This document shows positions 10,761-63,466 of a DNA stretch of 64,000 bases, one piece after another. The translations under genes and the position numbers were made by a program. The stretch's first letter is position 1. Every line of letters starts with the position of its first letter. The notes beneath the pieces are model-generated. The model saw only the letters and a list, made by a program, of their open reading frames with translations, was not told where the DNA came from and did not search any database. The DNA is taken from positions 433,195 to 497,194 of the IMG/VR virus record IMGVR_UViG_3300017971_000185; one strand, written 5' to 3'.

Positions 10761-10766
10761 GTGTGA

Positions 10767-39597: not shown

Positions 39598-40765
39598 CAA
39601 GAGGCCACCGCGAGAAGTCTTGGAGAGCTTGGTCGCGGAGCTTTTGACGCAACAGCAGATTGCTGGTCGTTATGGTGTGGCTCAGGTAACGGTGAGTCGC
39701 TGGCTGCGGCATTATGGGATTGAGGCGTTGGGTAAGACGGGGAAGATTGATCGGGAGCTGCCGCCTCTGACCGCGATTCAGCAGGCGCTCGTCGTGGGAT
39801 CTTTGTTGGGGGACGGGACGATGAGTGCTCCCAGCTTTCGCACGGCACGGATTGCGGAGGGGCATGCGCTCAAGCAGCGGGAGTACACGGATTGGAAGGC
39901 CGGCATCATGGGATCTTACGTGTCCAATCAGTATGAGGCTACCAAACGGAAGGACGGCAAGACGTACAAGGCGTGGTGGTATTCGTCTCGGACGACGACT
40001 CGGCTGCGTCCTTTTTACGATATGTTTTACGGCAGCGGGCACAAGGTGTTTCCGAAGCAGTTACCTGAGTTGATGACGCCTTTTGTGCTTGCCGTGTGGT
40101 ACATGGATGACGGGAGCCGGTGGGGGAGGTACTACCCACGCATCTCCTACGGCCTGGATGCTCAGGGTCTAGACCGAGCTTTGGAGGCTTTGGCGATGTT
40201 GGGTTTGTCTCCAAAGGTATACACGAGCAAGAAGGGGCGCACGCTTCATTTTCCGGGGCAAGATGATCTTTTCTTTAGCTTGGTCCGAGAGCATGTGCAT
40301 TCGTGTATGGTTTACAAGCTGCCTCTTGAGCGTGTCCGAAAACGTTATGTGTTTGTTGCGGAGAGGCAGGATCGGAGGCCCGAGTTTATTTCTGCCCTGA
40401 CGCCGGAGCGTTTGCGGAAGATGTACGAAGGCGACCTGATGACGGATGGGGAGATTGCTGTTTGTGTTGCCAAGCGCTTTGGTGTTTCTCCGTTTCGTGC
40501 GGAGACTGTGCGGAGAGTCCGAAAGAAGTGGGGTATTCCGGCCATGACGAGTCAGGAACGGAAAGAGAGGAGGCGTGGGACTGCTCCGCGATTGACTGGC
40601 TTGACACGGAAGGTTTTGGAACGTTTGTACGTCGAGGATTTGCTAAGCGACACGGAAATTGGGAGAATCTACGGCGTGAGCAAGACGCCGATTCGGGCAC
40701 GACGCAGGGCATACGGGATTTTGGCCATTTCCAAGGCAGAACGAGCCAGGTTGAGGTTGGGTTGA
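39590..40765 (+). CDS. LAGLIDADG homing endonuclease with HTH modules
   Basis: VVGSLLGDG and LAVWYMDDG; TQQQIAGRYGVAQVTV; AGGAG RBS before ATG 39590. Confidence 0.85.
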   Translation: MRSKRPPREVLESLVAELLTQQQIAGRYGVAQVTVSRWLRHYGIEALGKTGKIDRELPPLTAIQQALVVGSLLGDGTMSAPSFRTARIAEGHALKQREYTDWKAGIMGSYVSNQYEATKRKDGKTYKAWWYSSRTTTRLRPFYDMFYGSGHKVFPKQLPELMTPFVLAVWYMDDGSRWGRYYPRISYGLDAQGLDRALEALAMLGLSPKVYTSKKGRTLHFPGQDDLFFSLVREHVHSCMVYKLPLERVRKRYVFVAERQDRRPEFISALTPERLRKMYEGDLMTDGEIAVCVAKRFGVSPFRAETVRRVRKKWGIPAMTSQERKERRRGTAPRLTGLTRKVLERLYVEDLLSDTEIGRIYGVSKTPIRARRRAYGILAISKAERARLRLG

Positions 40766-40807: not shown

Positions 40808-42055
40808 GTGATGAGCGACGGATCGTTCAAGCGGTTTCTCGGGATTTCCGTTCTGGAGGCAGCGCGTCAGCGTATCTCTTGGACATTTGATGTGTTTGAG
40901 AAGATCTGCGTTTCGTTTTCGGGCGGGAAGGATTCGGGGGTCATGTTGCATCTTGTCATGGACGAAGCCATCAAGCGGGGTCGGAAGGTTCATGTCATGT
41001 TCATCGACTGGGAGGCGCAATACGATCTCACGATCAGCTACGTGCGGGATTGTTTCAAGCTGTATGAGGAGCACATCATTCCCTATTGGGTGTGTCTCCC
41101 GTTGACGACCACGAATGCGGTCAGCGTATACGAGCCCGAGTGGGTTTGTTGGGACCCGGCCAAGAAGGATTTGTGGGTACGTCCGCTGCCTGAGGGTGTG
41201 ATATCAGATCCTCGCGGGTTTCCCTTCTACGAAGACAAGATGACATTCGAGGACTTTGTCCCAGAATTCGGCGAGTGGTTTGGCCAGGATGCCGGCTCCG
41301 CCGCGTGTCTGATTGGTCTTCGGTCTGGGGAGTCGTTGAATCGGTTTCGGACGTTGATTAGCGATCGGAAGGTGACCAAGGATGGGAGGCAGTGGACGAC
41401 CAAGGTAGGGCAGCCGGGGACGTTCAATGTCTACCCGATCTATGATTGGCAAACGAAAGACGTTTGGACATATTACGGGGCGTTTGAGAAGCCGTACAAT
41501 CGGTTGTATGATCGGTTTTACCAGGCTGGGTTGTCGCTGCACCAGATGCGGATTTGCGAGCCCTATGGAGATGAGCAGCGCCGGGGCTTATGGTTGTTTC
41601 ACGTGATCGAGCCACAGACGTGGAGCCGCATCATGGCCCGTGTTGCGGGGGCGAATTCCGGCGCCTTGTATGCTGGCGAGCGTGGAAACATCTTGGGAAA
41701 TCAGAAGGTCACGCTACCTGATGGTCATACGTGGAAATCGTTTACGATGATGTTGCTCGATACGATGCCGCAGGCGACGGCTGAGCATTACAGGAACAAG
41801 TTTGCGGTCTATCTCAAGTGGTACAAGGACCACGAGGGTTTGGACGACGTACCTGATTCCGTGCCTGGTGATACAGGGTCGCGGGATGTGGGGTCTTGGC
41901 GTCGGATGGCGCGTTGCATCTTGAAAAACGACTTCTGGGCAAGTAGTTTGAGTTTCGGTCCTCAGAGAAATTCGGCGTACAAGAAGTATCAAGATCTCAT
42001 GAAACGCAGGCGCAGAGAGTGGGGTATTTTTGCAGAGACGGTGACAGATGAGTAA
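40808..42055 (+). CDS. ibrA: PAPS-reductase-family (DUF3440, IbrA/YbdN-like) protein
   Basis: VSFSGGKDS PP-loop, IGLRSGESLNR, YPIYDW, QMRICEPYGDEQR. Confidence 0.82.
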   Translation: MMSDGSFKRFLGISVLEAARQRISWTFDVFEKICVSFSGGKDSGVMLHLVMDEAIKRGRKVHVMFIDWEAQYDLTISYVRDCFKLYEEHIIPYWVCLPLTTTNAVSVYEPEWVCWDPAKKDLWVRPLPEGVISDPRGFPFYEDKMTFEDFVPEFGEWFGQDAGSAACLIGLRSGESLNRFRTLISDRKVTKDGRQWTTKVGQPGTFNVYPIYDWQTKDVWTYYGAFEKPYNRLYDRFYQAGLSLHQMRICEPYGDEQRRGLWLFHVIEPQTWSRIMARVAGANSGALYAGERGNILGNQKVTLPDGHTWKSFTMMLLDTMPQATAEHYRNKFAVYLKWYKDHEGLDDVPDSVPGDTGSRDVGSWRRMARCILKNDFWASSLSFGPQRNSAYKKYQDLMKRRRREWGIFAETVTDE

Positions 42056-48767: not shown

Positions 48768-49301
48768 ATGCGCAAGTACCTTCTGATTCTCGGTTGCCTC
48801 GCCTTCATCGCCTAGATCGGCGTCAGGGCGTATGCTGCAATCCAGTACGACCGGCAGGTTGGTGGTCACCTGAAGCTCGCTGCTGATGCGTCCAACATCC
48901 AGCTTGCACAGGATCGGCTGGCTCTCGGTCTTGAGGGCATGGACGACCGACTAGGCGGAGGCAAGTGGTGCCATGACCCCGACAAGCAGGAATTCTACAC
49001 GTCGGTGGTCTACACGACTCCAGATGAGAACGTGTCATTTTGGTGCCAGAATCTACTCCAAGCGCTCACCGATCTGCGTGAGCTACCGCCTGATTCCGAC
49101 GCGCTCACGGTGAGCAACACGTTGATGAAGGTGCGTGAGACGCTGCTCGATGAGGGCCAGAGCGTGAGGGTCACGAGTCCAGACGGCATTTCGGTCTACC
49201 CCCACAACACGCCTTTCTTCTTGTGGGGGTGGGGATCGTTTCTGCTGATTGGCCTCTGTGTGGGGTCGTGGGTGTGGGAGAACCGGGAGGACATCTTCTA
49301 G
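48768..49301 (+). pseudogene. Membrane protein gene with an in-frame TAG at 48813-48815
   Basis: MRKYLLILGCLAFIA*IGVRAY... continues in frame into ORF 48939-49301; hydrophobic N- and C-termini. Confidence 0.6.
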
Positions 49302-49471
49302 GGAAACCGGTCGGAGTTGCCGACGCTGAGGAGTGACGGCAAGGTCACTCTTCGCGTTCTCAAGAGAACCCAGGTTGTCCTGGTTTCTCTCGCGCTTGGC
49401 GCTTGACGAAGAGATCTCCTTTTCGCTTCGCTGAATTTTTCGTGGAAGGTTGTTCTCGGCCTGATTAGGGG

Positions 49472-49500
49472 TTGACTCGGCGCAGGTCTCCAAGTATGGT
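49472..49500 (+). promoter_or_regulatory. Sigma70-type promoter of the cas operon
   Basis: TTGACT-N17-TATGGT; GGAG RBS at 49550-49553. Confidence 0.7.
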
Positions 49501-49563
49501 GGCGGGTGGCGGCGCACGGGGCGCGGCTGTCTCAATCTACCACCAACATGGAGATCAGATCAG

Positions 49564-50532
49564 ATGAAAACACCAAGTCTCAAGAGACTCGATTGGATGG
49601 CTTTCTTCGAATCGGAGTTGGGCATCTGCAATGGAGACCCGGACAATCCGGGTTATCCGAGGATGACGGAGGACGGCTATCTGGTGATCAGCGGTCCTTT
49701 CCTGAATCGTCTGGGACGCAATCAGTACGAGCGCATGGTGGAGACGGGCGAGCTGCCCGCAAAGGGGAATGCGATCCACATTCAGCGTGGAGCCCGGCTT
49801 GCTAACGTTGCTGAGGAAGCCATTGCTGCGGCTGATCCCAAGGAAGCCGGGAAGATCTTGGAGGATGCCCGTAGTAAGCGCGACAAAGAGGCTGAGGAGG
49901 GGAAGAAAAAGACAAGAGCCCGGTCGAGTGTCAAGTATCCAGAGGAGAAGGTTCACGATGCGCTGACTCGCACGTTCATCGATGACGCGATGTACGGATC
50001 GGTCTTGACGAGCACAGTTTACACAGCCCCTTCCATTCACGGCGCCGTCACTACGCGTATGGGCATGTCTCTTCATCCTGTGGAGCTACACAACATGACC
50101 AACACGCGCATGGCGTCTGATAGTGATGCGGTGGACCGTTCTCGCGACTTCGCGCGCTCTAAACCGGTTCGCTACGCGCTCATTCGCACTGTGGGAACCT
50201 TTGATGCTTTTCGGGCTGAGAAGAACCATGTCGATGCTGAGCGTCTCAAGGATTTCTTTGCCGTCTATCTGACGATGTGCGACAACGCGACATCGAATGC
50301 GCGCGGAACCTTCGGCCTTCGGGAGTTGATTGTGGTCAAGCACAAGAGCCCCACAGGCAGCATGAGTCTGATCGATTTCAAGGATCGGCTCAAGGTGCGT
50401 ATGCGGAATGGGGAGTGCCCGCGCTCGTTTGCCGACATCGAGCTTGGCTATGATGACAAGAACCTCCCTCCGGGGGCTGAGATCATCCGACTGGCTGAGC
50501 TACGGGGGAACTTGGATTGGCTGGTTAGCTGA
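49564..50532 (+). CDS. cas7: Type I-C Cas7 (Csd2), divergent
   Basis: CNGDPDNPGYPRMTEDG, FIDDAMYGSV, GAVTTRMGMSLHPV..TNTR. Confidence 0.85.
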   Translation: MKTPSLKRLDWMAFFESELGICNGDPDNPGYPRMTEDGYLVISGPFLNRLGRNQYERMVETGELPAKGNAIHIQRGARLANVAEEAIAAADPKEAGKILEDARSKRDKEAEEGKKKTRARSSVKYPEEKVHDALTRTFIDDAMYGSVLTSTVYTAPSIHGAVTTRMGMSLHPVELHNMTNTRMASDSDAVDRSRDFARSKPVRYALIRTVGTFDAFRAEKNHVDAERLKDFFAVYLTMCDNATSNARGTFGLRELIVVKHKSPTGSMSLIDFKDRLKVRMRNGECPRSFADIELGYDDKNLPPGAEIIRLAELRGNLDWLVS

Positions 50533-51197
50533 TGCCAAGTGTTTACTTTCAGGGCGACTTCGCCCACTTTTCCAACCCGCTGCTGAAGGCCGAGGGGACT
50601 ACCTTTCCCGGCCCTCCGCCTTCGGCTCTCCGCGGAGCCATTGAAAACATCCTGTTCAAGATGGGCGTCTACGTGGATGTCCGCCGCATCACGTACCACC
50701 GGCCGATTCGGACGATGAACTTCAAGACGAACGGCCTCAAACATGCGGTAGGCATGTCGCAGATCACGCTCCCGGATGCCCATCAGATGAACAACACGTT
50801 GCTCTACGACGTGGCCTATACAGTGGACTTCGATCTGCGCTTGTGTTGGCGTGACCGAGAGACCCAAGAGATCGTTAAGTTCGATGAGAGGGTGCTGGAG
50901 AGCCAGGATCTTCGGAAGTACATGGCGATGTACGAGAAGTATATCCGCCTGGGTAAGTGTCAGCACCCGCCTTGGCTGGGGTCGAAATTCTGCGAAGCTC
51001 TGTTCAGGGCACCCCGGCCCGAGGACACGCCGATTCAGGAGTCGCGGGACTTGGGGATGATGACGCACGGCATCGAGTACCGTAAGGCGGGGAACATCAC
51101 CCATGTCTTTCATCCGGTGATGAGAGACGGGGTTGTAGAGGTGGACTCGTTCTTCGATGTTCTCAAGGCCCGCTACGGGTTGAGGGCGGGTCAATGA
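50532..51197 (+). CDS. cas5: Type I-C Cas5 (Cas5c/Cas5d)
   Basis: GDFAHFSNP..PPPSALRGAIENI, LLYDVAY, PPWLG, DLGMM, PVMRDGVVEV. Confidence 0.88.
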   Translation: MPSVYFQGDFAHFSNPLLKAEGTTFPGPPPSALRGAIENILFKMGVYVDVRRITYHRPIRTMNFKTNGLKHAVGMSQITLPDAHQMNNTLLYDVAYTVDFDLRLCWRDRETQEIVKFDERVLESQDLRKYMAMYEKYIRLGKCQHPPWLGSKFCEALFRAPRPEDTPIQESRDLGMMTHGIEYRKAGNITHVFHPVMRDGVVEVDSFFDVLKARYGLRAGQ

Positions 51198-52870
51198 TTC
51201 GTCTCGACACACTCGTTGCCTTGGGGCAACGGGAAAAACTCGGCTATCTGCTCGATGACCAGCGGCCCTATGGGGAAGTTGTGTTGGATGCGGAGGGCCA
51301 CATCATCACTGTTCGCAAATCCTCTGGGGCGGTTCCCGTCCCAGACTTGCCCAATCGCACCAACTCCGAGTTGCGCATTGGGATGTATGTCGAGAACGAG
51401 ATGTATCTCTTTGGGACGACTCCGAAGGAGTACAAGGACCCCACGAAGCCTAGGAAAGCGCTGGAGCACGCTGCTGAAGCCTATGCCAAGATCGCCAAGG
51501 AAGTGCGGATCAAAGCCACACAGGCGGTCGCGCGGTTCTACGACTTGTCTCTAAGGGGCAAGCACAAGGTGCCGAAGGGGTGGCGATTTCAGCGGTATGT
51601 GTTTGTCTATAAGGACCAATACCTGCCCAGCGTTCCGCAGCTTCGCCCTGTGATTGAGAAATTTGTAGATGCCATTCCTAGCGTGGACAGCATCGAAAGG
51701 CAGTGCTTGATTACGGGAGAGTGGGTGCGGTGTCAGACGACGCCCCACGCAAACACCAAAGGACTTAGCTCCAACTCCAGTGGAGCGTCCTTTGTGAGTT
51801 TCAATGGGACAAGTCAGTACCAGGGGCGTCCCGAGGATCGGTTCTTGACGGCTCCCATCGCCCCTGGTGTATCTCGACTCATGACTTCAGCGCTTTCGTG
51901 GTTGAGCCGGAATCGTAGAATCCAACTCACGCCCGATCTCAATGTCTTGGTCTGGACTGAGGAAGGCCACCCGCTAGAGGCTCTCGGGCCGAAGTTGTTT
52001 GCGCCAGAGAAGGAGTCCCGAGAACAGCGAACGAAACGCGAAGAGGAAGCCGTTGGTGACCTCTTCGCTCATCCTGAGTGGGATGAGAGCACGGAGGCCG
52101 CCTACCTCCTGACAACGACTGGGAATATGGGTCGCTTCGCGGTCCGTGAGTGGGAGGAAACGACTGTCGGCAGGCTCTCTGCCAATCTGAGGCGGTTCGT
52201 TCAGGACTTCACAGTCGAGATCACAGTTGGGGAAGAGGAAGTCCAAGCTCGTCACACGTCTCTCTCGCGGCTGTACGCAGCGTGGTCCGATAGGCAGGTG
52301 GTACACCGTGACATCCTTGCCCTAGCCAACATGGCGCTCAAAGGAATGCCGGTACCAGAGTGTGCGTGGCCCTCCGGTGCGCCAGAAACCATTATCCAGA
52401 AAGCCATCTTTCAAGCGTATAGGAAACGGAACATGGAGAATCCAGGAAATTTCACAGCGGACATCAGCGTAGACGGGCAGTCGAATGCTTACCGGATGGG
52501 ACGGGCTTGTGCCGTCATGGAGGACGCTCGGTACAGCGCGAACAGAGCCAACAGTCGGGGGGTGATCGCGCACAATGTGGTTGACAACCCGTCTGTTGGG
52601 TTTCACCGGGCGATGCAGTCCATCATCCACCATTTGCCCAAGCGCCCAGGCAATCAGTACGCTGAGAGTCTCAGCGTGTTCACCAGCGGGATCGAAATTC
52701 CTGATCGGTTTGCTGTTCGGGAGCAGAACGAGTTTTGGCTGGGGTATCTCTACGAGCAGGGCCGTCAAAGCTACTTGTATAGGCTGGGGCGCGATGCCAA
52801 GAGCGCCAAGAAGAGCGAGCAGGGCGCGGATGGCCAGGACGTAGACGCCAGGGCATTGCTTGATGATTGA
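51194..52870 (+). CDS. cas8c: Type I-C Cas8c (Csd1)
   Basis: CLITG..PH..KG..ASFVSFN, TSALSWL, VLVW, AYRMGR..FWLGY. Confidence 0.82.
   Translation: MIRLDTLVALGQREKLGYLLDDQRPYGEVVLDAEGHIITVRKSSGAVPVPDLPNRTNSELRIGMYVENEMYLFGTTPKEYKDPTKPRKALEHAAEAYAKIAKEVRIKATQAVARFYDLSLRGKHKVPKGWRFQRYVFVYKDQYLPSVPQLRPVIEKFVDAIPSVDSIERQCLITGEWVRCQTTPHANTKGLSSNSSGASFVSFNGTSQYQGRPEDRFLTAPIAPGVSRLMTSALSWLSRNRRIQLTPDLNVLVWTEEGHPLEALGPKLFAPEKESREQRTKREEEAVGDLFAHPEWDESTEAAYLLTTTGNMGRFAVREWEETTVGRLSANLRRFVQDFTVEITVGEEEVQARHTSLSRLYAAWSDRQVVHRDILALANMALKGMPVPECAWPSGAPETIIQKAIFQAYRKRNMENPGNFTADISVDGQSNAYRMGRACAVMEDARYSANRANSRGVIAHNVVDNPSVGFHRAMQSIIHHLPKRPGNQYAESLSVFTSGIEIPDRFAVREQNEFWLGYLYEQGRQSYLYRLGRDAKSAKKSEQGADGQDVDARALLDD
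52433..52870 (+). CDS. cas11: Putative Cas11c by internal translation of cas8c
   Basis: AGGA..CGGA RBS and in-frame ATG just before the SNAYRMGR segment, where type I-C Cas11 normally begins. Confidence 0.55.
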   Translation: MENPGNFTADISVDGQSNAYRMGRACAVMEDARYSANRANSRGVIAHNVVDNPSVGFHRAMQSIIHHLPKRPGNQYAESLSVFTSGIEIPDRFAVREQNEFWLGYLYEQGRQSYLYRLGRDAKSAKKSEQGADGQDVDARALLDD

Positions 52871-55070
52871 CGTGTGTCAATTCGTCACCGGCCTCTCCTC
52901 GGACAGAGGAGAGGCCGAATCTTCTGGCCCCGACTCTCTGTGGGAGCATCAGCAGTTTGGGTTCCTTGATGTAGTAGACCACATCCTGAATCGGAAGGAG
53001 AAGCAAGTTGGGCTGTCTGGCCAGCCAGGGTGTGGTAAGACGCGCCTTACGACGTATATTGCGGCTTACTTGGCCAAGTCTCCGGTGTCTCCTATCACTA
53101 GAGTAGTCGTTGTGGTCCCGACCCAGATCATTCGGGACCAGTACAGAGGACAGAAGTCTGTAGTCCGGTTTGGGGCTGTTGAGGACGTAGCTGGGGAGGG
53201 CCCGAACAACAAAGCTGTCATCTCGGTCCCTGACATTGACTTAGGGAAGCTGATAGACCCTATGGTGGCTGGTCCAAAATATCTCGTGGACCACGTCACA
53301 GGTGCCGGCAAGCCGAGAGTCATCCTTGCCACGACTATGGACACCTTTCGCAGAGCCCTAGATTGCATTGGCGACATGAGCCATGTGTTAGTCGTTCTCG
53401 ATGAGGCGCATCGGTTCCCTGTAGGAGAATTCAAAGCATGGGCAAAGGCCAGAGTCGCTTGTGAGGAGAAGAGTGCCACTATCCTTGCCACGACGGCTAC
53501 GATGTACCGAGCGGACGGGCTTCCGATTTGTCCTGGTGCGTACATACACCAAATTCCCCGGATCAAACTGATTGAGGCTGGCCTCTGCCCAAGTCGCTTT
53601 CCTGTAAAGGTTGTTCTCCTTCCCTCCGTCGCTAAGACAGCGACGGAGGTAGTGGATGTCCGTGTGAAAGGGGAAGGAACGGAAGGAACCCTTGTAGAGC
53701 TTCTGACCGATGACGATCTCCGTTTTGGGGTGCGGCATTGGGTTGGTCTGGGATGCCCGTTTGGCCTCATGCGATGCCAAACCCAGGCGTTGACCAAGCG
53801 CTTGAAAGAAATTGTCGAGGAGGAGTGTCCCCACCTGAAGGCTGAGGAGGTGGGGCGCCCCGTTGTGGATCTTTCGGGCAAAGAGGTAGACAAGATGTGG
53901 CCCGTTGTGGATCTTTCGGGTTCCAAGGTGAACAAGGCGTTGGAGGCCCAGATTGCGCATGATGGCCGTGTGCGGCATGCCAATGAGATACGGACACAGC
54001 TAGTTGTGGGCATTCGACGTGTTGAGTGTGGTTTCGACTGGCCTCCGGTATCTCATGTCTTCAACTTCGGGCTCATTTCGTCTGAGACCCTCCTGGCCCA
54101 GCTTCGAGGACGGGGTTGGCGTTCGAAGACGAGATACGAGGGCTACCCTGAGCGGTTTCGGGATGAGGCGTGGCTCATCATGTTTGTGCCGACTGTGTCA
54201 GAGGAAGCTCGAACGGAGTTTCTGAGGAGCCCTGATCATCTCAAGCTGTTGATGATCATCGCGGCGACCACGGTCAATGAAGAGGCAGGTACTCTGCTGT
54301 CGTTCATCCATGATGAGATCCAGAAGGGGTTGTCGCGGTATGTGCGTGGGTACCGGGACCAGTTGCAGGTCATCCGTATCCTGGGGGCCCTCAACCCTGA
54401 GCCCAGAGAGATGGACGAAATACGGGCTGATCTTGGAAAGATCGAGACTCGGCTCGGAGGCGATGTGTCCGTTTCGGACTACATCAGAGAGATTGTCTTA
54501 GAGTCGCGGGACGAGAAGAAGCGTGGGGTCGTGAAGAGAAAGTGGTCGAGACGACGGAAGCTCGGAGCCCTGATTCTTTTGTTGGGGCAGAAGGGTCAGT
54601 CCAAGAAAGAGACCGCGCGGCTGATTCGGGAGCTTCTGGACAAGAAGAAATCGGTTACGCTCGTGGAGAGTCCTGAGCAGGTTTCAGATGAGGTTCGCTC
54701 CGTGCTTGCAGATGCTCTCAATCAGTTGGTTGAGAAGCATGGCGACATTGTTACCTTCACGGACACATACGAGGAGATGGCGGCCACCATGAACACCGAT
54801 GTGGACACTATCCGTCGCATGCAGCGAGAGGTGGACCGTCTGACACAATTCAAGCCTCGCAGCTATCAGGTTGCTGTTGAGGCTGTTAGCCAAGAGTTGG
54901 TTCACTGCGGAAGGCGGTGGAAGGTTCTCCAGGACCTTTCCGGGCCTCTTGGCTTGGACCCAGGGACCTACACAATGCGTCATCTCGATCGCGATCTACG
55001 ACATCAGGTGTTGAAAGGCCAGCCAGAGGACATCAACAGTTTGAGAGACTTGAGGCATGCGTTTCGGTAA
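52860..55070 (+). CDS. SF2 (DEAH) helicase without HD nuclease domain
   Basis: LWEHQ, GQPGCGKT, LDEAH, TAT, VECGFDWP, QLRGRGWR; motif I starts ~50 aa from the N-terminus. Confidence 0.8.
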   Translation: MMIDVCQFVTGLSSDRGEAESSGPDSLWEHQQFGFLDVVDHILNRKEKQVGLSGQPGCGKTRLTTYIAAYLAKSPVSPITRVVVVVPTQIIRDQYRGQKSVVRFGAVEDVAGEGPNNKAVISVPDIDLGKLIDPMVAGPKYLVDHVTGAGKPRVILATTMDTFRRALDCIGDMSHVLVVLDEAHRFPVGEFKAWAKARVACEEKSATILATTATMYRADGLPICPGAYIHQIPRIKLIEAGLCPSRFPVKVVLLPSVAKTATEVVDVRVKGEGTEGTLVELLTDDDLRFGVRHWVGLGCPFGLMRCQTQALTKRLKEIVEEECPHLKAEEVGRPVVDLSGKEVDKMWPVVDLSGSKVNKALEAQIAHDGRVRHANEIRTQLVVGIRRVECGFDWPPVSHVFNFGLISSETLLAQLRGRGWRSKTRYEGYPERFRDEAWLIMFVPTVSEEARTEFLRSPDHLKLLMIIAATTVNEEAGTLLSFIHDEIQKGLSRYVRGYRDQLQVIRILGALNPEPREMDEIRADLGKIETRLGGDVSVSDYIREIVLESRDEKKRGVVKRKWSRRRKLGALILLLGQKGQSKKETARLIRELLDKKKSVTLVESPEQVSDEVRSVLADALNQLVEKHGDIVTFTDTYEEMAATMNTDVDTIRRMQREVDRLTQFKPRSYQVAVEAVSQELVHCGRRWKVLQDLSGPLGLDPGTYTMRHLDRDLRHQVLKGQPEDINSLRDLRHAFR

Positions 55071-55689
55071 GGCCAAGGAAGTTTCGCGGGAGAACAATCT
55101 CCTTCACGTGATGAACAGCTATTTGCTGTTCTCGGGCGGCAAGATGCGAGTCGATTGGCTGGAGGTGCCGGGCGAAGGCTCTCCGATGGTGAGAATCCTT
55201 CGATCCTATCTCGTACCGGGCGTGTCCAAGCTCGTTTGTTTGGATCGTAACGCCGAGTACGTCCGGGAGGGCGAGGAGCAATACGGGAGTGAGATCTGCG
55301 AGTGGGTTTTGGCCGATGACTTGTTTGCCGAGCTAGCTAATTCACCGGACAAGTACGCTAACGTAGGGGTTCTGAATGTCGATCTCTACAACAGCCTTCG
55401 TCTGCTCGAATTCCCCGAACAGATGCGGATCGTCATGGAGTTTGCCACACGCCAGTTCTGGGCGATCGGGGCCTTCATGGTGTTTCTGAACTACTCGATG
55501 CGAGGCAGTGTTCGCGAGGAGTTTGCTCAAGACGTGATCAAGACTCTGGAGCCTTATCTAGATTTGTCACAGGTTGATCTCACTGATGAGGGCTACCTGT
55601 ACAAAGGAGGAACGCCTGACCAACCAGGCAACCGGAGATTGAATCTTCGGATACACCTAGGACCAACAAGGACACCGAACAATGAGTAA
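55057..55689 (+). CDS. Putative class I SAM-dependent methyltransferase-like protein
   Basis: Rossmann-like order WLEVPGEGS (motif I), LVCLDRN (acidic end of beta2), VLNVDLY, VFLNYS. Confidence 0.45.
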   Translation: MRFGKAKEVSRENNLLHVMNSYLLFSGGKMRVDWLEVPGEGSPMVRILRSYLVPGVSKLVCLDRNAEYVREGEEQYGSEICEWVLADDLFAELANSPDKYANVGVLNVDLYNSLRLLEFPEQMRIVMEFATRQFWAIGAFMVFLNYSMRGSVREEFAQDVIKTLEPYLDLSQVDLTDEGYLYKGGTPDQPGNRRLNLRIHLGPTRTPNNE

Positions 55690-56020
55690 GAAGAACGATG
55701 ATCTGGAGGCGGTTCGTGTGATCGCTGATGCGCTTGAACCGTTTGATGATGTCGTCAGGGAGCGTATTCTGAAATGGGCATGTGAGCGGGTCGGGATGCA
55801 CCCCAAGGAGATCAAGATCATACATGAGACACAAACTGCCTATTCGGAAGACGGTGGGGGTGGGAAGAGCCCCGCCGAGAAGGCAGCCAGGACCAGGAAG
55901 GCCAATGCTGAGAAGCGCTCTGAGGCCGCCAGGAAAGCGAACAAGACCAGGGGGAAGAAGGGGCGATCCGAGGCCGCAAAGAAGGCAGCGGCTACGCGTC
56001 GTGCTTGTCAGGCTGCCTAG
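55682..56020 (+). CDS. Small protein with basic histone-H1-like AxKAxxTR repeats
   Basis: AEKAARTRK, EAARKANKTRG, EAAKKAAATRR. Confidence 0.65.
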   Translation: MSKKNDDLEAVRVIADALEPFDDVVRERILKWACERVGMHPKEIKIIHETQTAYSEDGGGGKSPAEKAARTRKANAEKRSEAARKANKTRGKKGRSEAAKKAAATRRACQAA

Positions 56021-56076: not shown

Positions 56077-56229
56077 CCTGAGGTTTCCTTCTGCGGGGCG
56101 ATTGCGAGTACAACGAGCTTTCTGACATTCGCAGAGTAGAACACGTCAGCGCTGTTCAGGCGCGCGATTTCACCCCTCGTGCATAACCTGCGATTACGAG
56201 CAATGATTTCAGCAGGTTCTAAGCCAAGG

Positions 56230-56558
56230 GTTTCCGCCCTGTTACGGGGCGGTTGCGATTACAAGGAAGAGCCGCTGGACCTGAGCGCAGCCACCAAGCT
56301 GTTTCCGCCCTGTTACGGGGCGGTTGCGATTACAAGAGCCGTGAACGAGCAGGAATGCGCCCAAATCCTGGCCGAGTTTCCGCCCTGTTACGGGGCGGTT
56401 GCGATTACAAGGCCATGAGCTTGGCGCTCATTGATTCGAGGGCCGCTGCGTTTCCGCCCTGTTACGGGGCGGTTGCGATTACAAGATCGAGATTCTGCGG
56501 TGGACACGCGCCAGCATGTTGAGTTTCCGCCCTGTTACGGGGCGGTTGCGATTACAAG
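56230..56558 (+). CRISPR. Block A: 5 identical 36-nt repeats
   Basis: GTTTCCGCCCTGTTACGGGGCGGTTGCGATTACAAG at 56230, 56301, 56376, 56450, 56523; spacers 35, 39, 38, 37 nt. Confidence 0.97.
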
Positions 56559-56592
56559 GATTGCACGGCCTACGAGGGGTTTCCGCTCTCTC

Positions 56593-56836
56593 TTCCGTCT
56601 CCGGCCTCGAATCGAGGAGGCGGTTTCGATTGCAACGCACGCGGATGCGAAACTCCGTCTTCTCCAAGTCTGTCTCCGCGGGAGGCGGTTTCGATTGCAA
56701 CATGTCGTGCGTCGAGACATCCAGAGTGGGTTCCGTCTCCGCGGGGAGGCGTTTCGATTGCAACACCAACGGCGGTCAGGGAGTTGGAGCATGGGATTGC
56801 GTTCCGTCTCCGCGGGGAGACGGTTTCGATTGCAGT
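56593..56836 (+). CRISPR. Block B1: 4 variant repeats
   Basis: Consensus GTTCCGTCTCCGCGGGGAG(G/A)CGGTTTCGATTGCAAC at about 56593, 56668, 56730, 56801. Confidence 0.85.
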
Positions 56837-56863
56837 ATGTTGGTGGTGGAATCCTCGCCGAGT

Positions 56864-56893
56864 AGAGCCCCCTCAAACGAGGGGGCTCTTTTT
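56864..56893 (+). terminator. Intrinsic terminator inside the array
   Basis: AGAGCCCCCTC-AAAC-GAGGGGGCTCT (11-bp stem) followed by TTTT. Confidence 0.85.
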
Positions 56894-56939
56894 CCCAGTC
56901 TTCGATTACAACTACGCCATTCGGCCCCAAGGCGATCTC

Positions 56940-57345
56940 GTTTCCGCCCTCCTGCGGAGCGGTTGCGATTACAACGCTCTCACCGGCCTCAGTGTTCTCT
57001 ACTCCTTCTGGTTTCCGCTCCTCTGCGGAGCGGTTGCGATTACAACTACCGGACCGACAGCTACACCAATCTGATCAGAAAATCGAGCACCGTCGCATCG
57101 GACAGTGGTTTCCGCTCCTCTGCGGAGCGGTTGCGATTACAACTAATCGGTTTCCACCGCCGAGGGAGAACCCCGCACGTTTCCGCCCTCCTGCGGGGCG
57201 GTTGCGGTTACAACGTGACGGTCACAGGTCGAATTTCGTCTGCCCGGTCCGCCCTCCTGCGGGGCGGTTGCGATTACAACGCTACCGAGAGATCGCGGAA
57301 CGGTTGGGTGTTTCCGCCCTCCTGCGGGGCGGTTGCGATTACAAC
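56940..57345 (+). CRISPR. Block C: 6 repeats
   Basis: GTTTCCGC(C/T)C..TGCGG(G/A)GCGGTTGCGATTACAAC at 56940, 57011, 57108, 57179, 57247, 57310. Confidence 0.93.
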
Positions 57346-57376
57346 CTGCACGCTCAGCCGCCCACGAGGGTACGAG

Positions 57377-57841
57377 GTTCGTCTCCGAGGGAGACGGTTT
57401 CGATTGCAACCAGATGTGGGATGCAGTGTCCGTGTCCGCCTCTCACGGAGGCGGTTTCGATTGCAATTTCGTTGGCTCTCACTGATCGGTTTTTCGTGTT
57501 CCGTCTCCGAGGAGGCGGTTTCGATTGCAACCCCACTGACCTCAGCGCCATACGACGGTTCCGTTCCGTCTCCGAGGAGACGGTTTCGATTGCAACCTCC
57601 ACCCACGTCGTGTAGGTGCCGCCCCGTAGAGGGGCGGTTTCGATTATAACACGCGGGACTCGGGAAGAAGTTGAACCCGGATCGTTGGGTCCGCCCTTTT
57701 GGGCGGTTTCGATTACAACAATCAAGGTGGTACGTCATTTCGGGAGAGGGAGCGATTGCGATTACAACCGCATGATGTCCTGGATGGGCTTGATCGTTGA
57801 GGTTTCCGCTCTCTGCGCTACGGAGGGCGGTTGCGATCAAC
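57377..57841 (+). CRISPR. Block B2 plus hybrid/degenerate repeats
   Basis: B-type at 57377, 57434, 57498, 57563; hybrids at 57616, 57689; degenerate at about 57746 and 57802. Confidence 0.85.
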
Positions 57842-60103: not shown

Positions 60104-61216
60104 GTGACCAAGGAAAGCAAATTCAAGCAACGCGTGCGTGATCGTATGGAGAGGACGGGCGAATCCTACGCTACTGCTCGACGCAACGAGAATGAGGCTG
60201 CGGGTTTGATCGAGGAGATGAAGGCAGTGGATGCTGAGCTTAGTGAGCTAGAGAAAGCTCAGCTAGAGCGCGAGAAGGTCAATCGTCAGTGGGTGAAGGA
60301 CAACCCAGGGCTCAAGGTTGTGACGCTGACGTTGACGCATAACGAGCACGGGACGCCGACGATTCACGTGTCGGGTCCTGAGCTTACGTCCATCCAGATC
60401 ACCCAGCCGCCTGACGTATACGTGGAAGCCATCCGACAGGCGTACCAGGACAACGAGTGGGCGAAGAACCCGAAGGACGATCTTGGTGATCTTCCCGAGT
60501 GTCGTTTGGAGGACTCCAAGCGCAAAGAGGACTTTGTCTACGAAAGCGGACCCGCGCCCGAGGGCACGATTCATGAGGACTTTGATGCGTTGGTGGCGGC
60601 GCTGTACAAGGTGAAGGGCCGTGTCATGTCTGTGGATCATCCGAACCATGGGCTTGTCGGGTTTGTGGAAACCGAGACGGACAAGTACCACTGGATACGG
60701 ATCAAGCCGACTCTTGCCTGGACTGAAACGGTCGCTTGGGAACATCTAGAGCTTTGGGGCCTGATGCAGACGCCGCGAGGGCGTTGCAAGGCCGCGGGTC
60801 TTTTCAGCCAGGAAGAGATGCTGGCGAAGGTGTCGTCGGCTCTAGAGGGCTGGTGGAAGAGTGCCTCTCCGTTTCCGACCAATCCTGATCCTGCGGAGAT
60901 CGTTGCTCCGCTTTCTGGAGAAGCGTTGGCTGATGTGTTTGCTCACGTCGAGAAATTCGATGTTTCGGTTGAGGCGATTGTGATGTCGGCGCGCAGTTTC
61001 CATGAGGTTTGTAAGCACGCAAGCGACAGCATCCGCTTGGAAACTCGTGCCCGGCTGATGAAGAAAGGGCTAATGGGTCGCCTGTGGGATGCTCTCGTGA
61101 TCACGACCCGAGAGATCGATGAGGATGAGATATGTTTCTTGGGTCGGGATCCCGAGGGGAAGTGGGTGTGTCACTCGCTTCGTGTGATTCGGCCATCTGC
61201 GCAGGGTTCAGAGTGA
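60104..61216 (+). CDS. Protein with C-terminal partial MCP paralog
   Basis: N-terminal KFKQRVRDRMERTGESYATARR; 60902-61111 is 28/70 identical, ungapped, to MCP 37323-37532. Confidence 0.8.
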   Translation: MTKESKFKQRVRDRMERTGESYATARRNENEAAGLIEEMKAVDAELSELEKAQLEREKVNRQWVKDNPGLKVVTLTLTHNEHGTPTIHVSGPELTSIQITQPPDVYVEAIRQAYQDNEWAKNPKDDLGDLPECRLEDSKRKEDFVYESGPAPEGTIHEDFDALVAALYKVKGRVMSVDHPNHGLVGFVETETDKYHWIRIKPTLAWTETVAWEHLELWGLMQTPRGRCKAAGLFSQEEMLAKVSSALEGWWKSASPFPTNPDPAEIVAPLSGEALADVFAHVEKFDVSVEAIVMSARSFHEVCKHASDSIRLETRARLMKKGLMGRLWDALVITTREIDEDEICFLGRDPEGKWVCHSLRVIRPSAQGSE

Positions 61217-63466
61217 CCTTCCGTGTTTTCGGAAGGCGATCCCGAGATTCCTTGCCCTGAGCTTGTCGTCTGCCCAGCACAGCCTGCATTCGCTACACGT
61301 CAACCCGGACAAGGTCTGCGCCGGGCAAGGGGCCAGCGACCAACCCGTCCCAGGTACCTGGAATACCTGACCGTCGGGAGATAGAGCAGGCACAATGACG
61401 GCAGGCGCGTACCCCATTGACACGACCCTCTTGATGTCTTCCACCGTGTCACAGGAGCCAAGGACGCTCGCCCGCCGAAACGCGGCGCGTGGGATCCACG
61501 CTGCCGAGTGAGTGTACGTCCACAGAGCCGTTCCCCTGTTCGCCAACCACCAGTCCGCGAGCCCAGCAACCATTTTTGCCTGACCGACCGTCGTCACGTC
61601 TCCACCACCATCGTGTAGACATAAGGCGAGCCCTTGGGGATCGGGAAATTTCTCCTTCGCAAGTTTGGCCTCAGCCGCGATAATTTCGTCGGCCGTCCAG
61701 TTTCCGTCTTTCGCTATTCGCTCAAGCCGCTTTGAGTTGCAAGGGTGTGCGTAGCATCCGTTGTCGCGCAGGGGGCAACTTGGCGGGCATGTTTGTTTGA
61801 TGGGAATCGAGGTTGAGATGATTTGAGAGATCGGCTTGGAGCCTCGGATCGGTGCATGTATTGCGACGGGTGGTTGGCGCGTTTTTGAAGAGATCCCGTG
61901 TTTGCGGAGATGGCAGATCACAGTTGATGGGGACACTTCCAGAGCTTGAGCGATGGTTTGATTGGTTGCTCCCTCTGCTACCATCTGTCGAAGAACATCC
62001 GCATCGAGGGGCTTGGGTTTCGGCCGCTCGATCCCATGTTTGCGGAGATGGTACGCCACAGTTGATGGGGACACTTCCAGAGCCCGAGCGATGGTCCGAT
62101 TGGTTGCTCCCTCTGCCACCATTTGTCGAAGAACATCCGCATCGAGCTTTCGAGCGGTGGTTTGGTTGGGTTTCTCTGCCACAACCTTCCGCTCGATCCC
62201 GTGTTTGCGGAGATGGTACGCCACAGTTGATGGGGACACTTTCAGAGCCCGCGCGATGGCCTGATCGGTTGCTCCCTCTGCTACCATCTGTTGAAGAACG
62301 TCCGCATCGAGAGTTTTCTGTTTCGGCCGCTCGATCCCGTGTTTGCGGAGATGGTACGCCACAGTTGATGGGGACACTTTCAGAGCCCGCGCGATGGCCT
62401 GATCGGTTGCTCCCTCCATCGTCATTTGTCGAAGAACATCCGCATCGAGGGGCTTGGGTTTTGGCCGCTTGATCCCGTGCTTGTGGAGATGGTACGCCAC
62501 AGTCGAGATAGACACTTTCAGAGCCCGAGCGATGGTCCGATTGGTTGCTCCCTCCATCACCATTTGTCGAAGAACATTCGCTTCTATGGTGGTTTTGCAG
62601 CGCTGCGATGGTGGAGGGGCGGCCTTCCAAAGCTCCTGTTGCCATTCGGAGAAACTGTCGAAATCGCGTCCGTTAGTGTAAGCCCATCGTTTGAGGAGAC
62701 GGCTGCGTTTGGGTTCGGGCGTCTTGCACCAAGCGATGTAATTCAGCAGCCATCGAAAGTTGGTCAGGGTTTTCGGAATCTCTGCGGGAAACCTTCGTGG
62801 GAAGATTTGTCGGAGGATTCTCTGAAGAGTCTCTTGTTTCCAGGCTCTAGTCTCGATCTGGAAAGGCGCGTACCACCCTGCCTTTTTTCCAGCAGACATC
62901 CAGGCTTGGATTTGAGCCTTGGTCTGGTCGGCCGATGCGTATTCTCTGCGGTACGATTTAGAGAAAAAATGCTTTCCGTCCGGCAGGCTTTCCAGCAAGC
63001 GTTTCTGTTTCGGTTCGATTTTTCCGAGAACGTATCGCCTGCGCCATGTTTCTAGCCACCATTTCCACTTTTTCTGGGAGCGTAGTTCCCAAAGAGATTG
63101 AGACTTTGTTAGGTGCTTGAGTCGGGTGATCCTGTCAAGCCATCGGGCGTGTGGGTATTTGCCGTCATTGTGGACTCGGTTGTTCCAGGTCCACCCGTCT
63201 AAGCTCTCAAGCAGCCGTATGCGATCTTGTGTTAGCTCTCCGTTGCGGTACATTCGGCGCTGATAAGCTATCCATTTCCCTATTGGTCGTCCGTCTCTTC
63301 GATCCGTGTAGCGGATTTGGTCGGCGCCACCACGTTCTTCCGATTCGGCAAGCACTTCGTAGTACGTCCCCATCCACTGGGCTGTCGAAAACGGTTGTGA
63401 TCGCTTCCGCCATCTTCGAAGGTCCCTCATCCAGTCTTTTTCGACGCACTGATCTCGGCTTGGCAT
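61208..63466 (-). CDS. Fusion: helicase-associated (HA)-like repeats + 5 HTH repeats + Cys-rich gp88-like domain
   Basis: IGKWIAYQRRMY..RIRLLESLDGWTW; 5x LDADVLRQM..HLRKHGI; TCPPSCPL..GCYA, LHDGGGD, WTYTH, CPAQT..CSECRLC. Confidence 0.75.
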   Translation of the reverse strand: MPSRDQCVEKDWMRDLRRWRKRSQPFSTAQWMGTYYEVLAESEERGGADQIRYTDRRDGRPIGKWIAYQRRMYRNGELTQDRIRLLESLDGWTWNNRVHNDGKYPHARWLDRITRLKHLTKSQSLWELRSQKKWKWWLETWRRRYVLGKIEPKQKRLLESLPDGKHFFSKSYRREYASADQTKAQIQAWMSAGKKAGWYAPFQIETRAWKQETLQRILRQIFPRRFPAEIPKTLTNFRWLLNYIAWCKTPEPKRSRLLKRWAYTNGRDFDSFSEWQQELWKAAPPPSQRCKTTIEANVLRQMVMEGATNRTIARALKVSISTVAYHLHKHGIKRPKPKPLDADVLRQMTMEGATDQAIARALKVSPSTVAYHLRKHGIERPKQKTLDADVLQQMVAEGATDQAIARALKVSPSTVAYHLRKHGIERKVVAEKPNQTTARKLDADVLRQMVAEGATNRTIARALEVSPSTVAYHLRKHGIERPKPKPLDADVLRQMVAEGATNQTIAQALEVSPSTVICHLRKHGISSKTRQPPVAIHAPIRGSKPISQIISTSIPIKQTCPPSCPLRDNGCYAHPCNSKRLERIAKDGNWTADEIIAAEAKLAKEKFPDPQGLALCLHDGGGDVTTVGQAKMVAGLADWWLANRGTALWTYTHSAAWIPRAAFRRASVLGSCDTVEDIKRVVSMGYAPAVIVPALSPDGQVFQVPGTGWSLAPCPAQTLSGLTCSECRLCWADDKLRARNLGIAFRKHGRSL
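61884..62587 (-). repeat. Five tandem HTH-coding repeats (period 138 nt, one 165 nt)
   Basis: Near-identical units, e.g. CATCCGCATCGAG recurring at about 61997, 62135, 62299, 62437. Confidence 0.92.

What the first reader, a model, noticed from the sequence alone, without database searches (positions are those of the whole stretch)
56801..56893. CreR-like autoregulatory unit: short spacer matching the cas promoter/leader at two sites, ended by a terminator
Seen: spacer 56837-56863 ATGTTGGTGGTGGAATCCTCGCCGAGT. Positions 1-11, 13, 14 and 16 match the minus strand of 49549-49534 (ATGTTGGTGGTAGATT), next to the cas7 RBS. The first mismatch is at position 12, which type I Cascades leave unpaired, and the 5' flank is TCC (canonical I-C PAM is TTC). 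Positions 11-27 match 49492-49475 (15/17, one bulge), overlapping the -35 box. The preceding repeat ends atypically (ATTGCAGT) and an 11-bp terminator replaces the next repeat. Known: CreA/CreR-type RNAs guide Cascade to repress promoters by partial pairing. Inference: a phage Cascade autorepresses through a bipartite guide embedded mid-array, possibly looping out the -10 region.
Basis: partly seen in the sequence, partly recalled or inferred. Interest (0 to 1): 0.88.

Follow-up and report, generated by a model that had tools for sequence, protein, structure and literature searches.

The report
Phage Cascade guide matching its own promoter
A giant phage that carries its own nuclease-free CRISPR Cascade also carries one odd guide RNA gene, closed by a terminator, whose first 11 bases match the leader of the phage's own cas operon, so the system probably turns itself down as bacterial CreR RNAs do, though this is inferred from one genome only.

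Summary
Repeat 56801-56836 uniquely ends CAGT. The 27-nt spacer 56837-56863 matches the minus strand of 49549-49534 at positions 1-11, 13, 14 and 16, with flank TCC. An 11-bp hairpin with a T-run follows.

The window is a huge phage (372-497 kb contigs). It carries the type I-C variant cas7-cas5-cas8c plus a helicase with no HD nuclease, and no cas1/2/4.

Site 1 lies +28 to +43 from the only sigma-70-like promoter upstream of cas7, on the non-template strand, abutting the Shine-Dalgarno. An anchored match this good in that 262-nt gap has P about 1e-4 to 1e-5 per spacer. No full-length target exists in IMG/VR or GTDB genomes. The hairpin plus T-run is the only one of its kind in 64 kb.

Best reading (0.52): a CreR-like autorepressor guide with a repeat-spacer-terminator layout, sitting at the junction of two sub-arrays.

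The "bipartite looping" idea is not supported. The distal similarity is probably real (P about 0.005). However, another spacer in the same array is a chimera whose halves match sites 10.6 kb apart in a target phage, so fusion of spacers explains it better.

The PAM is unresolved, and no relatives with arrays exist to test covariation. It is a new variant of a known kind.

The parts
49472..49500 (+). Predicted sigma-70-type promoter of the cas operon: TTGACT, 17 nt, TATGGT. Predicted start near 49507.
   Evidence: Only promoter-like site in 48800-49700, against 0.1 expected in shuffles. Identical in a second metagenome contig, L004.
49475..49492 (-). Site 2: similarity to spacer positions 11-27 (15 matches, 2 mismatches, 1 bulge). 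It overlaps the -35 hexamer, is on the same strand as site 1 and colinear with it, and lies 41 nt away.
   Evidence: Local alignment score 11, P = 0.0046 against mock 17-mers. Read as a trace of spacer fusion rather than a binding site.
49534..49549 (-). Site 1: proposed protospacer. Spacer positions 1-11, 13, 14 and 16 match. The crRNA would pair with the + strand, which is the non-template strand, at about +28 to +43.
49550..49553 (+). GGAG Shine-Dalgarno of cas7. Its first three bases are the complement of the TCC flank in the PAM position.
   Evidence: Read directly from the sequence. Same gene start called in L004.
49564..52870 (+). cas7 (49564-50532), cas5c (50532-51197) and cas8c (51194-52870) of a divergent type I-C variant.
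   Evidence: Pfam Cas_Cas7 7e-37, Cas_Cas5d 7e-11, Cas_Csd1 1e-42. NCBIfam I-C models hit below their cut-offs. Same gene order in L096.
52860..55070 (+). 736-aa helicase in the Cas3 position, with no HD nuclease domain detected.
   Evidence: ResIII, DEAD and Helicase_C hits only. 29% identical homologue in L096. Matches the 'helicase instead of Cas3' I-C variant of PMC7162821.
55057..56020 (+). Two unknown ORFs before the array: 210 aa (55057-55689, conserved in the relative L096) and 112 aa (55682-56020).
   Evidence: No family hits. 42% identity to the L096 homologue. A low-confidence model resembles a class I methyltransferase fold.
56077..56800 (+). First sub-array: a degenerate leader unit, five A-type repeats ending CAAG (56230-56558) and B-type repeats ending TTGCAAC (56594-56764), with their spacers.
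   Evidence: A-type spacers hit a ~35-kb phage.
56801..56836 (+). Repeat preceding the regulatory spacer. It has a perfect 8-bp hairpin, and its 11-nt handle ends AGT instead of AAC (9 of 11 handle bases conserved).
56837..56863 (+). 27-nt spacer-like guide.
   Evidence: No full-length target elsewhere.
56864..56893 (+). Intrinsic-terminator-like hairpin: 11-bp GC-rich stem, AAAC loop, then a T-run.
   Evidence: -24.7 kcal/mol, z -4.9. It is the only perfect stem of at least 8 bp followed by a T-run in the whole window on either strand. The stem ends 12 nt before the next handle, against 2 nt in 20 of the other 23 units.
56902..57841 (+). Second sub-array: an orphan 11-nt handle (56902-56912), then C-type, B-type and miscellaneous repeats down to a degenerate terminal repeat (57802-57841).
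   Evidence: No promoter predicted between the terminator and these units.

Best explanation
The unit 56801-56893 is a CreR-like regulatory crRNA gene of a phage-borne, nuclease-free type I-C variant Cascade.

Inferred steps:
1. It is transcribed on the + strand with the first sub-array, possibly as a run-on of the cas operon.
2. Cas5c cuts at the base of the hairpin in repeat 56801-56836, leaving an 11-13 nt 5' handle.
3. The 3' end is made by intrinsic termination near 56893 instead of by a second repeat.
4. The RNA is loaded into Cas7/Cas5/Cas8c and binds the cas7 leader DNA next to the TCC flank.
5. It pairs its first two 5-nt segments, and part of the third, with the non-template strand at 49549-49534, about 28-43 nt downstream of the predicted start site and directly before the Shine-Dalgarno.
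6. The bound complex blocks RNA polymerase and lowers expression of cas7-cas5-cas8c-helicase.
7. Pairing stops after about 16 nt, so the R-loop stays incomplete and the helicase is not engaged.
8. Because the guide competes with the other crRNAs for Cas proteins, the loop would tune Cascade supply to crRNA load.

Shown: the sequence relations, their statistics, the promoter and terminator predictions, and the absence of any other target.

Inferred: transcription, processing, loading, binding and repression.

The distal similarity to the -35 region is taken as a remnant of how the spacer arose, by fusion of two promoter-derived spacers or an internal deletion at a TGGA/TAGA microhomology. It is not taken as a second binding site.
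For: - The anchored 11-nt match (14 of 16) lies in the 262-nt gap upstream of cas7: P = 1.45e-4 and 1e-5 per mock spacer. It is the longest anchored match of all 24 spacers and the best local match between the gap and the array.
- Of five seed-rule hits in the window, it is the only one with an I-C-type flank and the only one that is intergenic.
- The first mismatch falls at position 12, a non-pairing position in type I complexes.
- The target sits just downstream of the only predicted promoter and on the non-template strand. In a transcribed region, apart from the stretch of template strand near the polymerase footprint, only that orientation lets Cascade block transcription (PMC4288209).
- The unit is singular in three independent ways: a unique handle ending, a unique strong hairpin plus T-run in 64 kb, and hairpin-to-handle spacing of 12 nt instead of 2.
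- No full-length protospacer exists in IMG/VR or in 596 Gb of GTDB genomes. Neighbouring spacers, by contrast, have near-perfect targets in a competitor phage.
- The repeat-spacer-terminator layout is reported for a putative V-A CreR and shown to work for its viral counterpart, CracrVA1. Matches of 10-15 nt next to cas promoters repress in I-B, I-E, I-F and V-A.
- TCC is functional in two I-C systems.
Against: - There is only one lineage. All three IMG/VR contigs and L004 are identical here. The only relatives of the variant (L095, L096-L101, L193) stop before or at the first repeat, so spacer-target covariation could not be tested.
- The flank is not the canonical TTC. The variant's own protospacers carry TTT, ATG and TTG, with T at -2 each time.
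- 5'-anchored partial matches also occur in decayed or fused spacers of the same array (56559, 56337). Partial complementarity may therefore be a by-product of decay.
- An intact 11-nt seed is only mildly unlikely under neutral decay (about 0.17 at the observed 85% identity).
- No promoter was predicted for the array.
- The U-tract is short (4 unpaired T).
- If the terminator is efficient, 14 downstream units are left without a visible promoter.
Confidence: 0.52

Rival explanations
1. Relic. One or two spacers were once taken from the phage's own cas7 promoter region, the second possibly by priming. They were then disabled by a fusion or deletion and by point changes. The present unit has no regulatory role, and the terminator merely separates two arrays.
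For: - The array lacks cas1/2/4 and is visibly decaying: fused repeat fragments at 56579-56593, spacers of 19-61 nt, a chimeric spacer 56337 and a seed-only match of spacer 56559.
- Both halves of the spacer resemble the promoter region at similar identity (88% and 83%), so there is no clear excess conservation of the seed.
- The flank is not canonical.
Against: - A chance self-derived spacer would come from this 262-nt gap of a 370-500 kb genome with probability below 1e-3.
- The coincidence with the only strong terminator in 64 kb and with the only altered handle is unexplained.
- An intact seed next to a usable I-C flank would still bind. In a nuclease-free system, binding at +28 to +43 on the non-template strand is itself repression.
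Confidence: 0.2
2. Antisense RNA. The terminator-ended RNA pairs with the cas7 mRNA 5' untranslated region (14 contiguous pairs counting one G-U) directly upstream of the Shine-Dalgarno. It lowers translation or stability, with or without Cas proteins.
For: - The guide is complementary to the mRNA-sense strand.
- Predicted duplex with the leader is -31.8 kcal/mol, P = 0.008 against mock 27-mers.
- A stable 3' hairpin with a U-tail is typical of bacterial small RNAs.
Against: - Two other spacers reach the same duplex energy with this GC-rich leader (-31.5 and -31.3), so the energy is not specific.
- The exact start of the match at spacer position 1, and the mismatch at position 12, are explained by Cascade geometry and not by free RNA pairing.
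- The upstream repeat and handle would be superfluous.
Confidence: 0.1
3. Bipartite guide. One Cascade pairs positions 1-16 with site 1 and positions 17-27 with site 2, extruding about 47 nt that include the -10 element.
For: Site 2 similarity is unlikely by chance (P = 0.0046). It is on the same strand and colinear with site 1, and it overlaps the -35 hexamer.
Against: - Type I R-loops grow directionally from the PAM, and no case of a looped-out target is known.
- About 75 bp would have to be unwound.
- The bulge does not fall at a flipped position.
- Spacer 56337 in the same array is bipartite too, with halves matching sites 10.6 kb apart in a target phage. That cannot be a single binding event, so fusion is the simpler cause.
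Confidence: 0.05
4. Pure coincidence. An ordinary spacer against an unsampled target happens to share 11 bases with the leader.
For: Unanchored, an 11-mer between the gap and the 1.9-kb array has BLAST E = 0.13. Most spacers of this array have no known target.
Against: - The anchoring, orientation, extension to 14 of 16, second similarity, flank and singular architecture are each independent of the 11-mer. The first four together multiply to well below 1e-4.
- No full target was found in two large collections.
Confidence: 0.05

Closest known systems
CreR (Cas-regulating RNA) and the regulatory mini-arrays of type I systems (Liu et al., bioRxiv 10.1101/2023.03.10.532045; Shmakov et al., PMC10120712)
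   Same: - A crRNA-like RNA whose PAM-proximal 10-15 nt match a site in or beside the promoter of the effector cas genes.
- The match is partial, so the target is bound but not attacked.
- The repeat is degenerate while the handle is mostly conserved.
- The predicted outcome is autorepression that senses crRNA load.
- I-C candidates were already predicted there (their Fig. S7).
   Different: - This one is encoded by a phage for the phage's own Cascade.
- It is not a stand-alone mini-CRISPR in a cas intergenic region but the last unit of a sub-array.
- The second repeat is replaced by a terminator.
- The flank is TCC rather than the canonical PAM.
- The target is in the transcribed leader at the ribosome-binding site rather than at the -35/-10.
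- The effector has no nuclease to be kept in check.
Type V-A CreR (putative) and viral Cracr RNAs with a repeat-spacer-terminator layout (bioRxiv 10.1101/2024.10.29.618823)
   Same: A single repeat-like element, a spacer with about 10 consecutive matching nucleotides, and a rho-independent terminator that makes the 3' end. Regulatory guides can also be stacked in array-like units in phages.
   Different: - Those are Cas12a guides, where only the 5' repeat is needed.
- Viral Cracrs hijack the host's Cas proteins to silence host cas genes. Here the guide matches the phage's own cas leader.
- A terminator-ended guide has not, in the papers read here, been described for a type I system.
tracr-L autoregulation of type II-A Cas9 (bioRxiv 10.1101/2020.05.21.102756)
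   Same: A natural guide with partial complementarity to its own cas promoter represses the operon.
   Different: A different effector class, a different RNA architecture, and a bacterial host.
Type I-C variant of huge phages (Al-Shayeb et al. 2020, PMC7162821)
   Same: The operon here fits their description: Cas5d-like processing enzyme, no Cas6, no Cas1/Cas2, and a helicase instead of Cas3, in a phage genome above 200 kb.
   Different: That paper did not describe a self-matching guide, the mosaic array or its targets. Whether this phage is one of their two was not established. No GenBank phage record matches.

Membership tests
CreR-type regulatory crRNA | crRNA-like architecture: a repeat-like element that keeps the hairpin and the handle-coding bases, followed by a spacer-like sequence | tested here: met
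   Perfect 8-bp hairpin ending 2 nt before the handle. 9 of 11 handle bases are conserved and only the last two are changed.
CreR-type regulatory crRNA | Partial complementarity, starting at the PAM-proximal end of the spacer, to a site in or next to the promoter of the effector cas genes | tested here: met
   Positions 1-11, 13, 14 and 16 match, 28-43 nt downstream of the predicted start and 15 nt before the cas7 ATG. P = 1.45e-4 to 1e-5 per spacer.
CreR-type regulatory crRNA | Target flanked by the PAM of the cognate system | tested here: inconclusive
   The flank is TCC, not the canonical I-C TTC. TCC works at lower efficiency in B. halodurans and L. pneumophila I-C. This variant's own protospacers show TTT, ATG and TTG, but some of them may be escape variants.
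CreR-type regulatory crRNA | Stand-alone degenerate mini-CRISPR (two repeat-like elements around the spacer) in a cas intergenic region | tested here: not met
   The unit is the last one of a sub-array. The hairpin of the second repeat is replaced by a terminator and only an 11-nt handle remains, 12 nt downstream. The repeat-spacer-terminator layout is described for type V-A only.
CreR-type regulatory crRNA | Cas-dependent, seed-dependent repression of the cas promoter | not testable with these tools
   This needs reporter assays, binding assays or RNA sequencing.
CreR-type regulatory crRNA | Conservation of the guide-target pair among related loci | not testable with these tools
   There are only identical copies. 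Relatives at 37-43% Cas7 identity lie on contigs that end before or at the first repeat. No relatives were found in GTDB genomes.
Type I-C CRISPR-Cas | Cas7/Csd2, Cas5c and Cas8c/Csd1 effector genes | tested here: met
   Pfam hits lie above the gathering scores. NCBIfam I-C models hit below their cut-offs, so the proteins are divergent. The nearest standard I-C Cas7 is about 30% identical.
Type I-C CRISPR-Cas | Cas3 with an HD nuclease, and the adaptation genes cas1, cas2 and cas4 | tested here: not met
   The protein in the Cas3 position has helicase domains only. Neither of the two ORFs between it and the array hit a cas1, cas2 or cas4 model. This is the 'I-C variant' of PMC7162821.
Rho-independent terminator | GC-rich stem-loop directly followed by a U-tract on the transcribed strand | tested here: met
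   11-bp stem with 8 GC pairs, 4-nt loop, z -4.9, and unique in the window. The U-tract is short (TTTT, then CCC). On the minus strand no T-run follows, so it is a terminator for the + strand only.

The most novel reading that the evidence does not exclude
The nuclease-free I-C variant of this huge phage is a pure transcription-silencing machine that works largely through seed-only guides. One guide autoregulates its own operon. That guide is truly bipartite: it contacts both the leader (site 1) and the -35 region (site 2) while extruding the -10 element. This would be a mode of target recognition not known for any Cascade.
Probability: 0.05. Interest if true: 0.85.

Novelty: new variant of a known kind. 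Interest (0 to 1): 0.55.

Why it matters
If it works as proposed, it would extend RNA-guided cas autoregulation (CreR, tracr-L) in two ways. First, to a CRISPR system owned by a virus. Second, to a type I guide whose 3' end is made by a terminator rather than by a second repeat.

It would also bear on what the nuclease-free type I-C variant of huge phages does. That system would be a Cascade that silences by binding, aimed both at a competitor phage from the same habitat and at its own promoter.

It also yields a compact guide layout (repeat, about 27 nt, terminator) that could be tried for type I CRISPR interference. The finding rests on one genome and is an extension of an established concept, not a new principle.

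Tried and rejected
Searches for related loci, to test spacer-target covariation:
- Cas7 alone, and alignments of Cas7, the helicase and the 210-aa protein, against IMG/VR gave only identical copies of this phage or standard I-C at 22-29%.
- The single metagenome scan returned only standard I-C.
- GTDB genomes gave nothing.
- The exhaustive protein search found just three related clusters. Their contigs (L095, L096-L101, L193, L194) end before or at the first repeat.
- Two profile searches added no members.
- A repeat-handle pattern scan of IMG/VR found arrays only in this phage.

Other searches that found nothing useful:
- GenBank phage records: no DNA match and no close Cas7.
- An array BLAST against phage records gave only a chance-level hit in the repeat.
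- Rfam: nothing relevant.

PAM inference from protospacers gave TTT, ATG, TTG and CAT/ATG. These are too few, and some are probably escape variants.

Ideas considered and rejected:
- The hairpin is merely another repeat variant. The spacing to the handle is 12 nt instead of 2, and the stem is 11 bp instead of 6-8.
- The array is transcribed from the minus strand. The handle orientation is conserved in the relative L193 and matches I-C repeats, and the T-run is on the + strand only.
- The unit is a viral anti-CRISPR guide against a host I-C system. Its match is to the phage's own leader.
- The repeat-like hit at 38598 is significant. It lies inside an ORF, has no hairpin and has one mismatch.

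Full report
**What is at the coordinates**

Reading the window confirms every letter of the finding.
- Repeat 56801-56836 has a perfect 8-bp hairpin and a handle ending AGT. The other 23 units of the array end CAAC, CAAG, CAAT or TAAC.
- The 27-nt spacer 56837-56863 follows. After it comes an 11-bp GC-rich hairpin with an AAAC loop (56864-56889) and a T-run.
- The spacer equals the minus strand of 49549-49534 at positions 1-11, 13, 14 and 16. The three bases 5' of that site read TCC. They are the complement of the first three bases of the GGAG Shine-Dalgarno, which lies 10 nt before the cas7 start codon at 49564.
- Positions 11-27 align with the minus strand of 49492-49475 (15 matches, 2 mismatches, one bulge), overlapping the -35 hexamer.

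**Context**

The window belongs to a huge phage.
- The same DNA sits on IMG/VR contigs of 372 and 497 kb.
- The window encodes a large terminase and a portal protein.
- Downstream of the target site lie cas7, cas5c, cas8c, a 736-aa helicase without a detectable HD nuclease, and two unknown ORFs.
- No cas1, cas2 or cas4 was found.

This is the "type I-C variant ... helicase instead of Cas3" that Al-Shayeb et al. noted in huge phages (PMC7162821). The variant is rare. An exhaustive search of 1.8 billion representative proteins found three related Cas7 clusters. One of them, P0006, sits in an ordinary type I-C locus with cas3-cas5-cas8c-cas7-cas4-cas1-cas2.

**The array**

The array (56077-57841) is a mosaic of 24 units with an invariant 11-nt handle core.
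- There are at least three repeat classes.
- Spacers range from about 19 to 61 nt, and fused repeat fragments occur.
- In 21 units a 6-8 bp hairpin ends exactly 2 nt before the handle.
- At least six different stem sequences keep pairing through changes on both sides, so processing signals appear to be maintained.
- The relative L193 shows a repeat with the same orientation and handle type, which supports + strand transcription.

The unit in question sits where B-type repeats give way to C-type repeats, so it is at the junction of two sub-arrays. Its hairpin is different in kind: 11 bp, 12 nt before the next handle, followed by T's. It is the only perfect stem of at least 8 bp with a T-run in all 64 kb on either strand. 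It folds at -24.7 kcal/mol, z -4.9.

**Is the match chance?**

- Mock 27-mers drawn from the window reach an 11-nt match anchored at position 1 in the 262-nt gap upstream of cas7 with P = 1.45e-4. With at least 14 of 16 as well, P = 1e-5. That is about 3e-3 to 2e-4 for 24 spacers.
- This spacer has the longest anchored match in the whole window.
- With the type I seed rule (positions 1-5 and 7-11), five spacers hit somewhere in the window. Only this hit is intergenic and has an I-C-like flank.
- The spacer has no full-length target in IMG/VR or in GTDB genomes.

The relation between this spacer and the cas7 leader is therefore real.

**Geometry**

The only sigma-70-like promoter in 48800-49700 is TTGACT, 17 nt, TATGGT at 49472-49500. 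That places site 1 at about +28 to +43.

The guide would pair with the + strand, which is the non-template strand. In E. coli, Cascade blocks transcription in a transcribed region essentially only in that orientation (PMC4288209).

The first mismatch is at position 12, which type I complexes do not pair.

Matches of 10-15 nt beside cas promoters suffice for repression by CreR or CreA and related guides in I-B, I-E, I-F and V-A.

**What the other spacers taught**

One A-type spacer (56412) has a 37/38 protospacer in a ~35-kb phage from the same sample series. Fetching that phage showed more:
- Spacer 56266 matches 33/35, with two seed mismatches.
- Spacer 56559 matches only at positions 1-12.
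- Spacer 57281 matches only at positions 5-20.
- Spacer 56337 is chimeric. Positions 2-12 match a site 25 nt from the 56266 protospacer. Positions 23-39 match the capsid gene 10.6 kb away.

Two consequences follow.
1. The flanks are TTT, ATG, TTG and CAT/ATG, so the PAM of this variant is unresolved. TCC, although functional in two studied I-C systems, cannot be called compatible.
2. Fused spacers and 5'-only matches are normal products of decay in this adaptation-less array. The two-site similarity of the regulatory spacer (site 2: P = 0.0046, same strand, colinear) is therefore best explained by fusion of two promoter-derived spacers, or by an internal deletion at the shared TGGA/TAGA. A guide that loops out the -10 region is not needed to explain it.

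**Most likely mechanism**

This is a CreR-like autorepressor. Cas5c cuts the upstream repeat, termination makes the 3' end, the RNA loads into Cas7/Cas5/Cas8c, and it binds the leader with a seed-only R-loop that blocks RNA polymerase just after promoter escape. I put this at 0.52.

The main rival (0.2) is that the unit is a disabled relic of self-derived spacers. Against it stand the improbability that self-derived spacers would come from this particular 262-nt gap, and the coincidence with the singular terminator and handle.

An antisense action on the mRNA (0.1) is possible. However, the predicted duplex energy is matched by two other spacers, and it does not explain the anchoring.

Bipartite looping and pure chance get 0.05 each.

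**Comparison and novelty**

The function-defining features of CreR are met for architecture and for seed match at the cas promoter. They are inconclusive for the PAM, not met for the stand-alone two-repeat layout, and untestable for repression and conservation.

The repeat-spacer-terminator layout is described for type V-A CreR and Cracr only. I found no report of a phage-owned Cascade with a self-matching guide.

I therefore rate it a new variant of a known kind. It is of moderate interest, and limited by single-lineage evidence.

**What led nowhere**

All attempts to obtain related loci with arrays failed. So did the searches of GenBank phages and of Rfam.

Noticed in passing
window 56077-57841: The CRISPR array is a mosaic of at least three repeat classes with one conserved 11-nt handle. 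Hairpin stems differ by compensatory changes, spacers run about 19-61 nt, and fused repeat fragments occur (e.g. 56579-56593). The system has no adaptation genes.
   Followed up: partly
window 56266-56578; L196:2080-2139, 10672-10902, 12736-12752: The A-type spacers target a ~35-kb tailed phage from the same sample series, hitting its portal, gp24-like and capsid genes. The matches are 37/38, 33/35 with seed mismatches, and one seed-only match. The huge phage's Cascade is therefore aimed at a competitor phage.
   Followed up: yes
window 56337-56375: Chimeric spacer. Its 5' 11 nt and its 3' 17 nt match two sites 10.6 kb apart in the target phage, which implies spacer fusion by internal deletion.
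   Followed up: partly
window 57411-57433 and 25187-25204: A spacer matches the phage's own DNA inside ORF 22310-25357 at 16 of its first 18 positions, with mismatches at 6 and 15. The flank is GGT. My estimate is roughly P 0.06 for the whole array. The meaning is unknown.
   Followed up: no
L156:640-790 (minus strand), also L185; outside the window: A solitary repeat with a spacer-like sequence, preceded by a TTGACA/17/TAGGGT promoter, lies elsewhere in the same phage genome. It may be a second stand-alone crRNA-like gene. No target was found in the DNA held.
   Followed up: partly
window 55057-55689: A 210-aa protein is conserved in the variant operon (42% identity in L096) and has no family hit. 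A low-confidence model (pLDDT 53) resembles class I SAM-dependent methyltransferases.
   Followed up: partly
window 61208-63466 (minus strand): A 752-aa protein carries at least five helix-turn-helix repeats, a DUF7227 domain and a sub-threshold hit to the CRISPR repeat-binding protein Cbp1. It lies 3.4 kb from the array.
   Followed up: no
window 49485-49502 and 49540-49556: An imperfect inverted repeat links the -10 region to site 1 plus the Shine-Dalgarno (fold z -2.0). It could be a protein operator, or a structure in read-through transcripts.
   Followed up: no
window 39371-40765 and 40808-42055: A LAGLIDADG/HNH-like homing endonuclease gene lies next to a PAPS-reductase-like auxiliary gene.
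   Followed up: no
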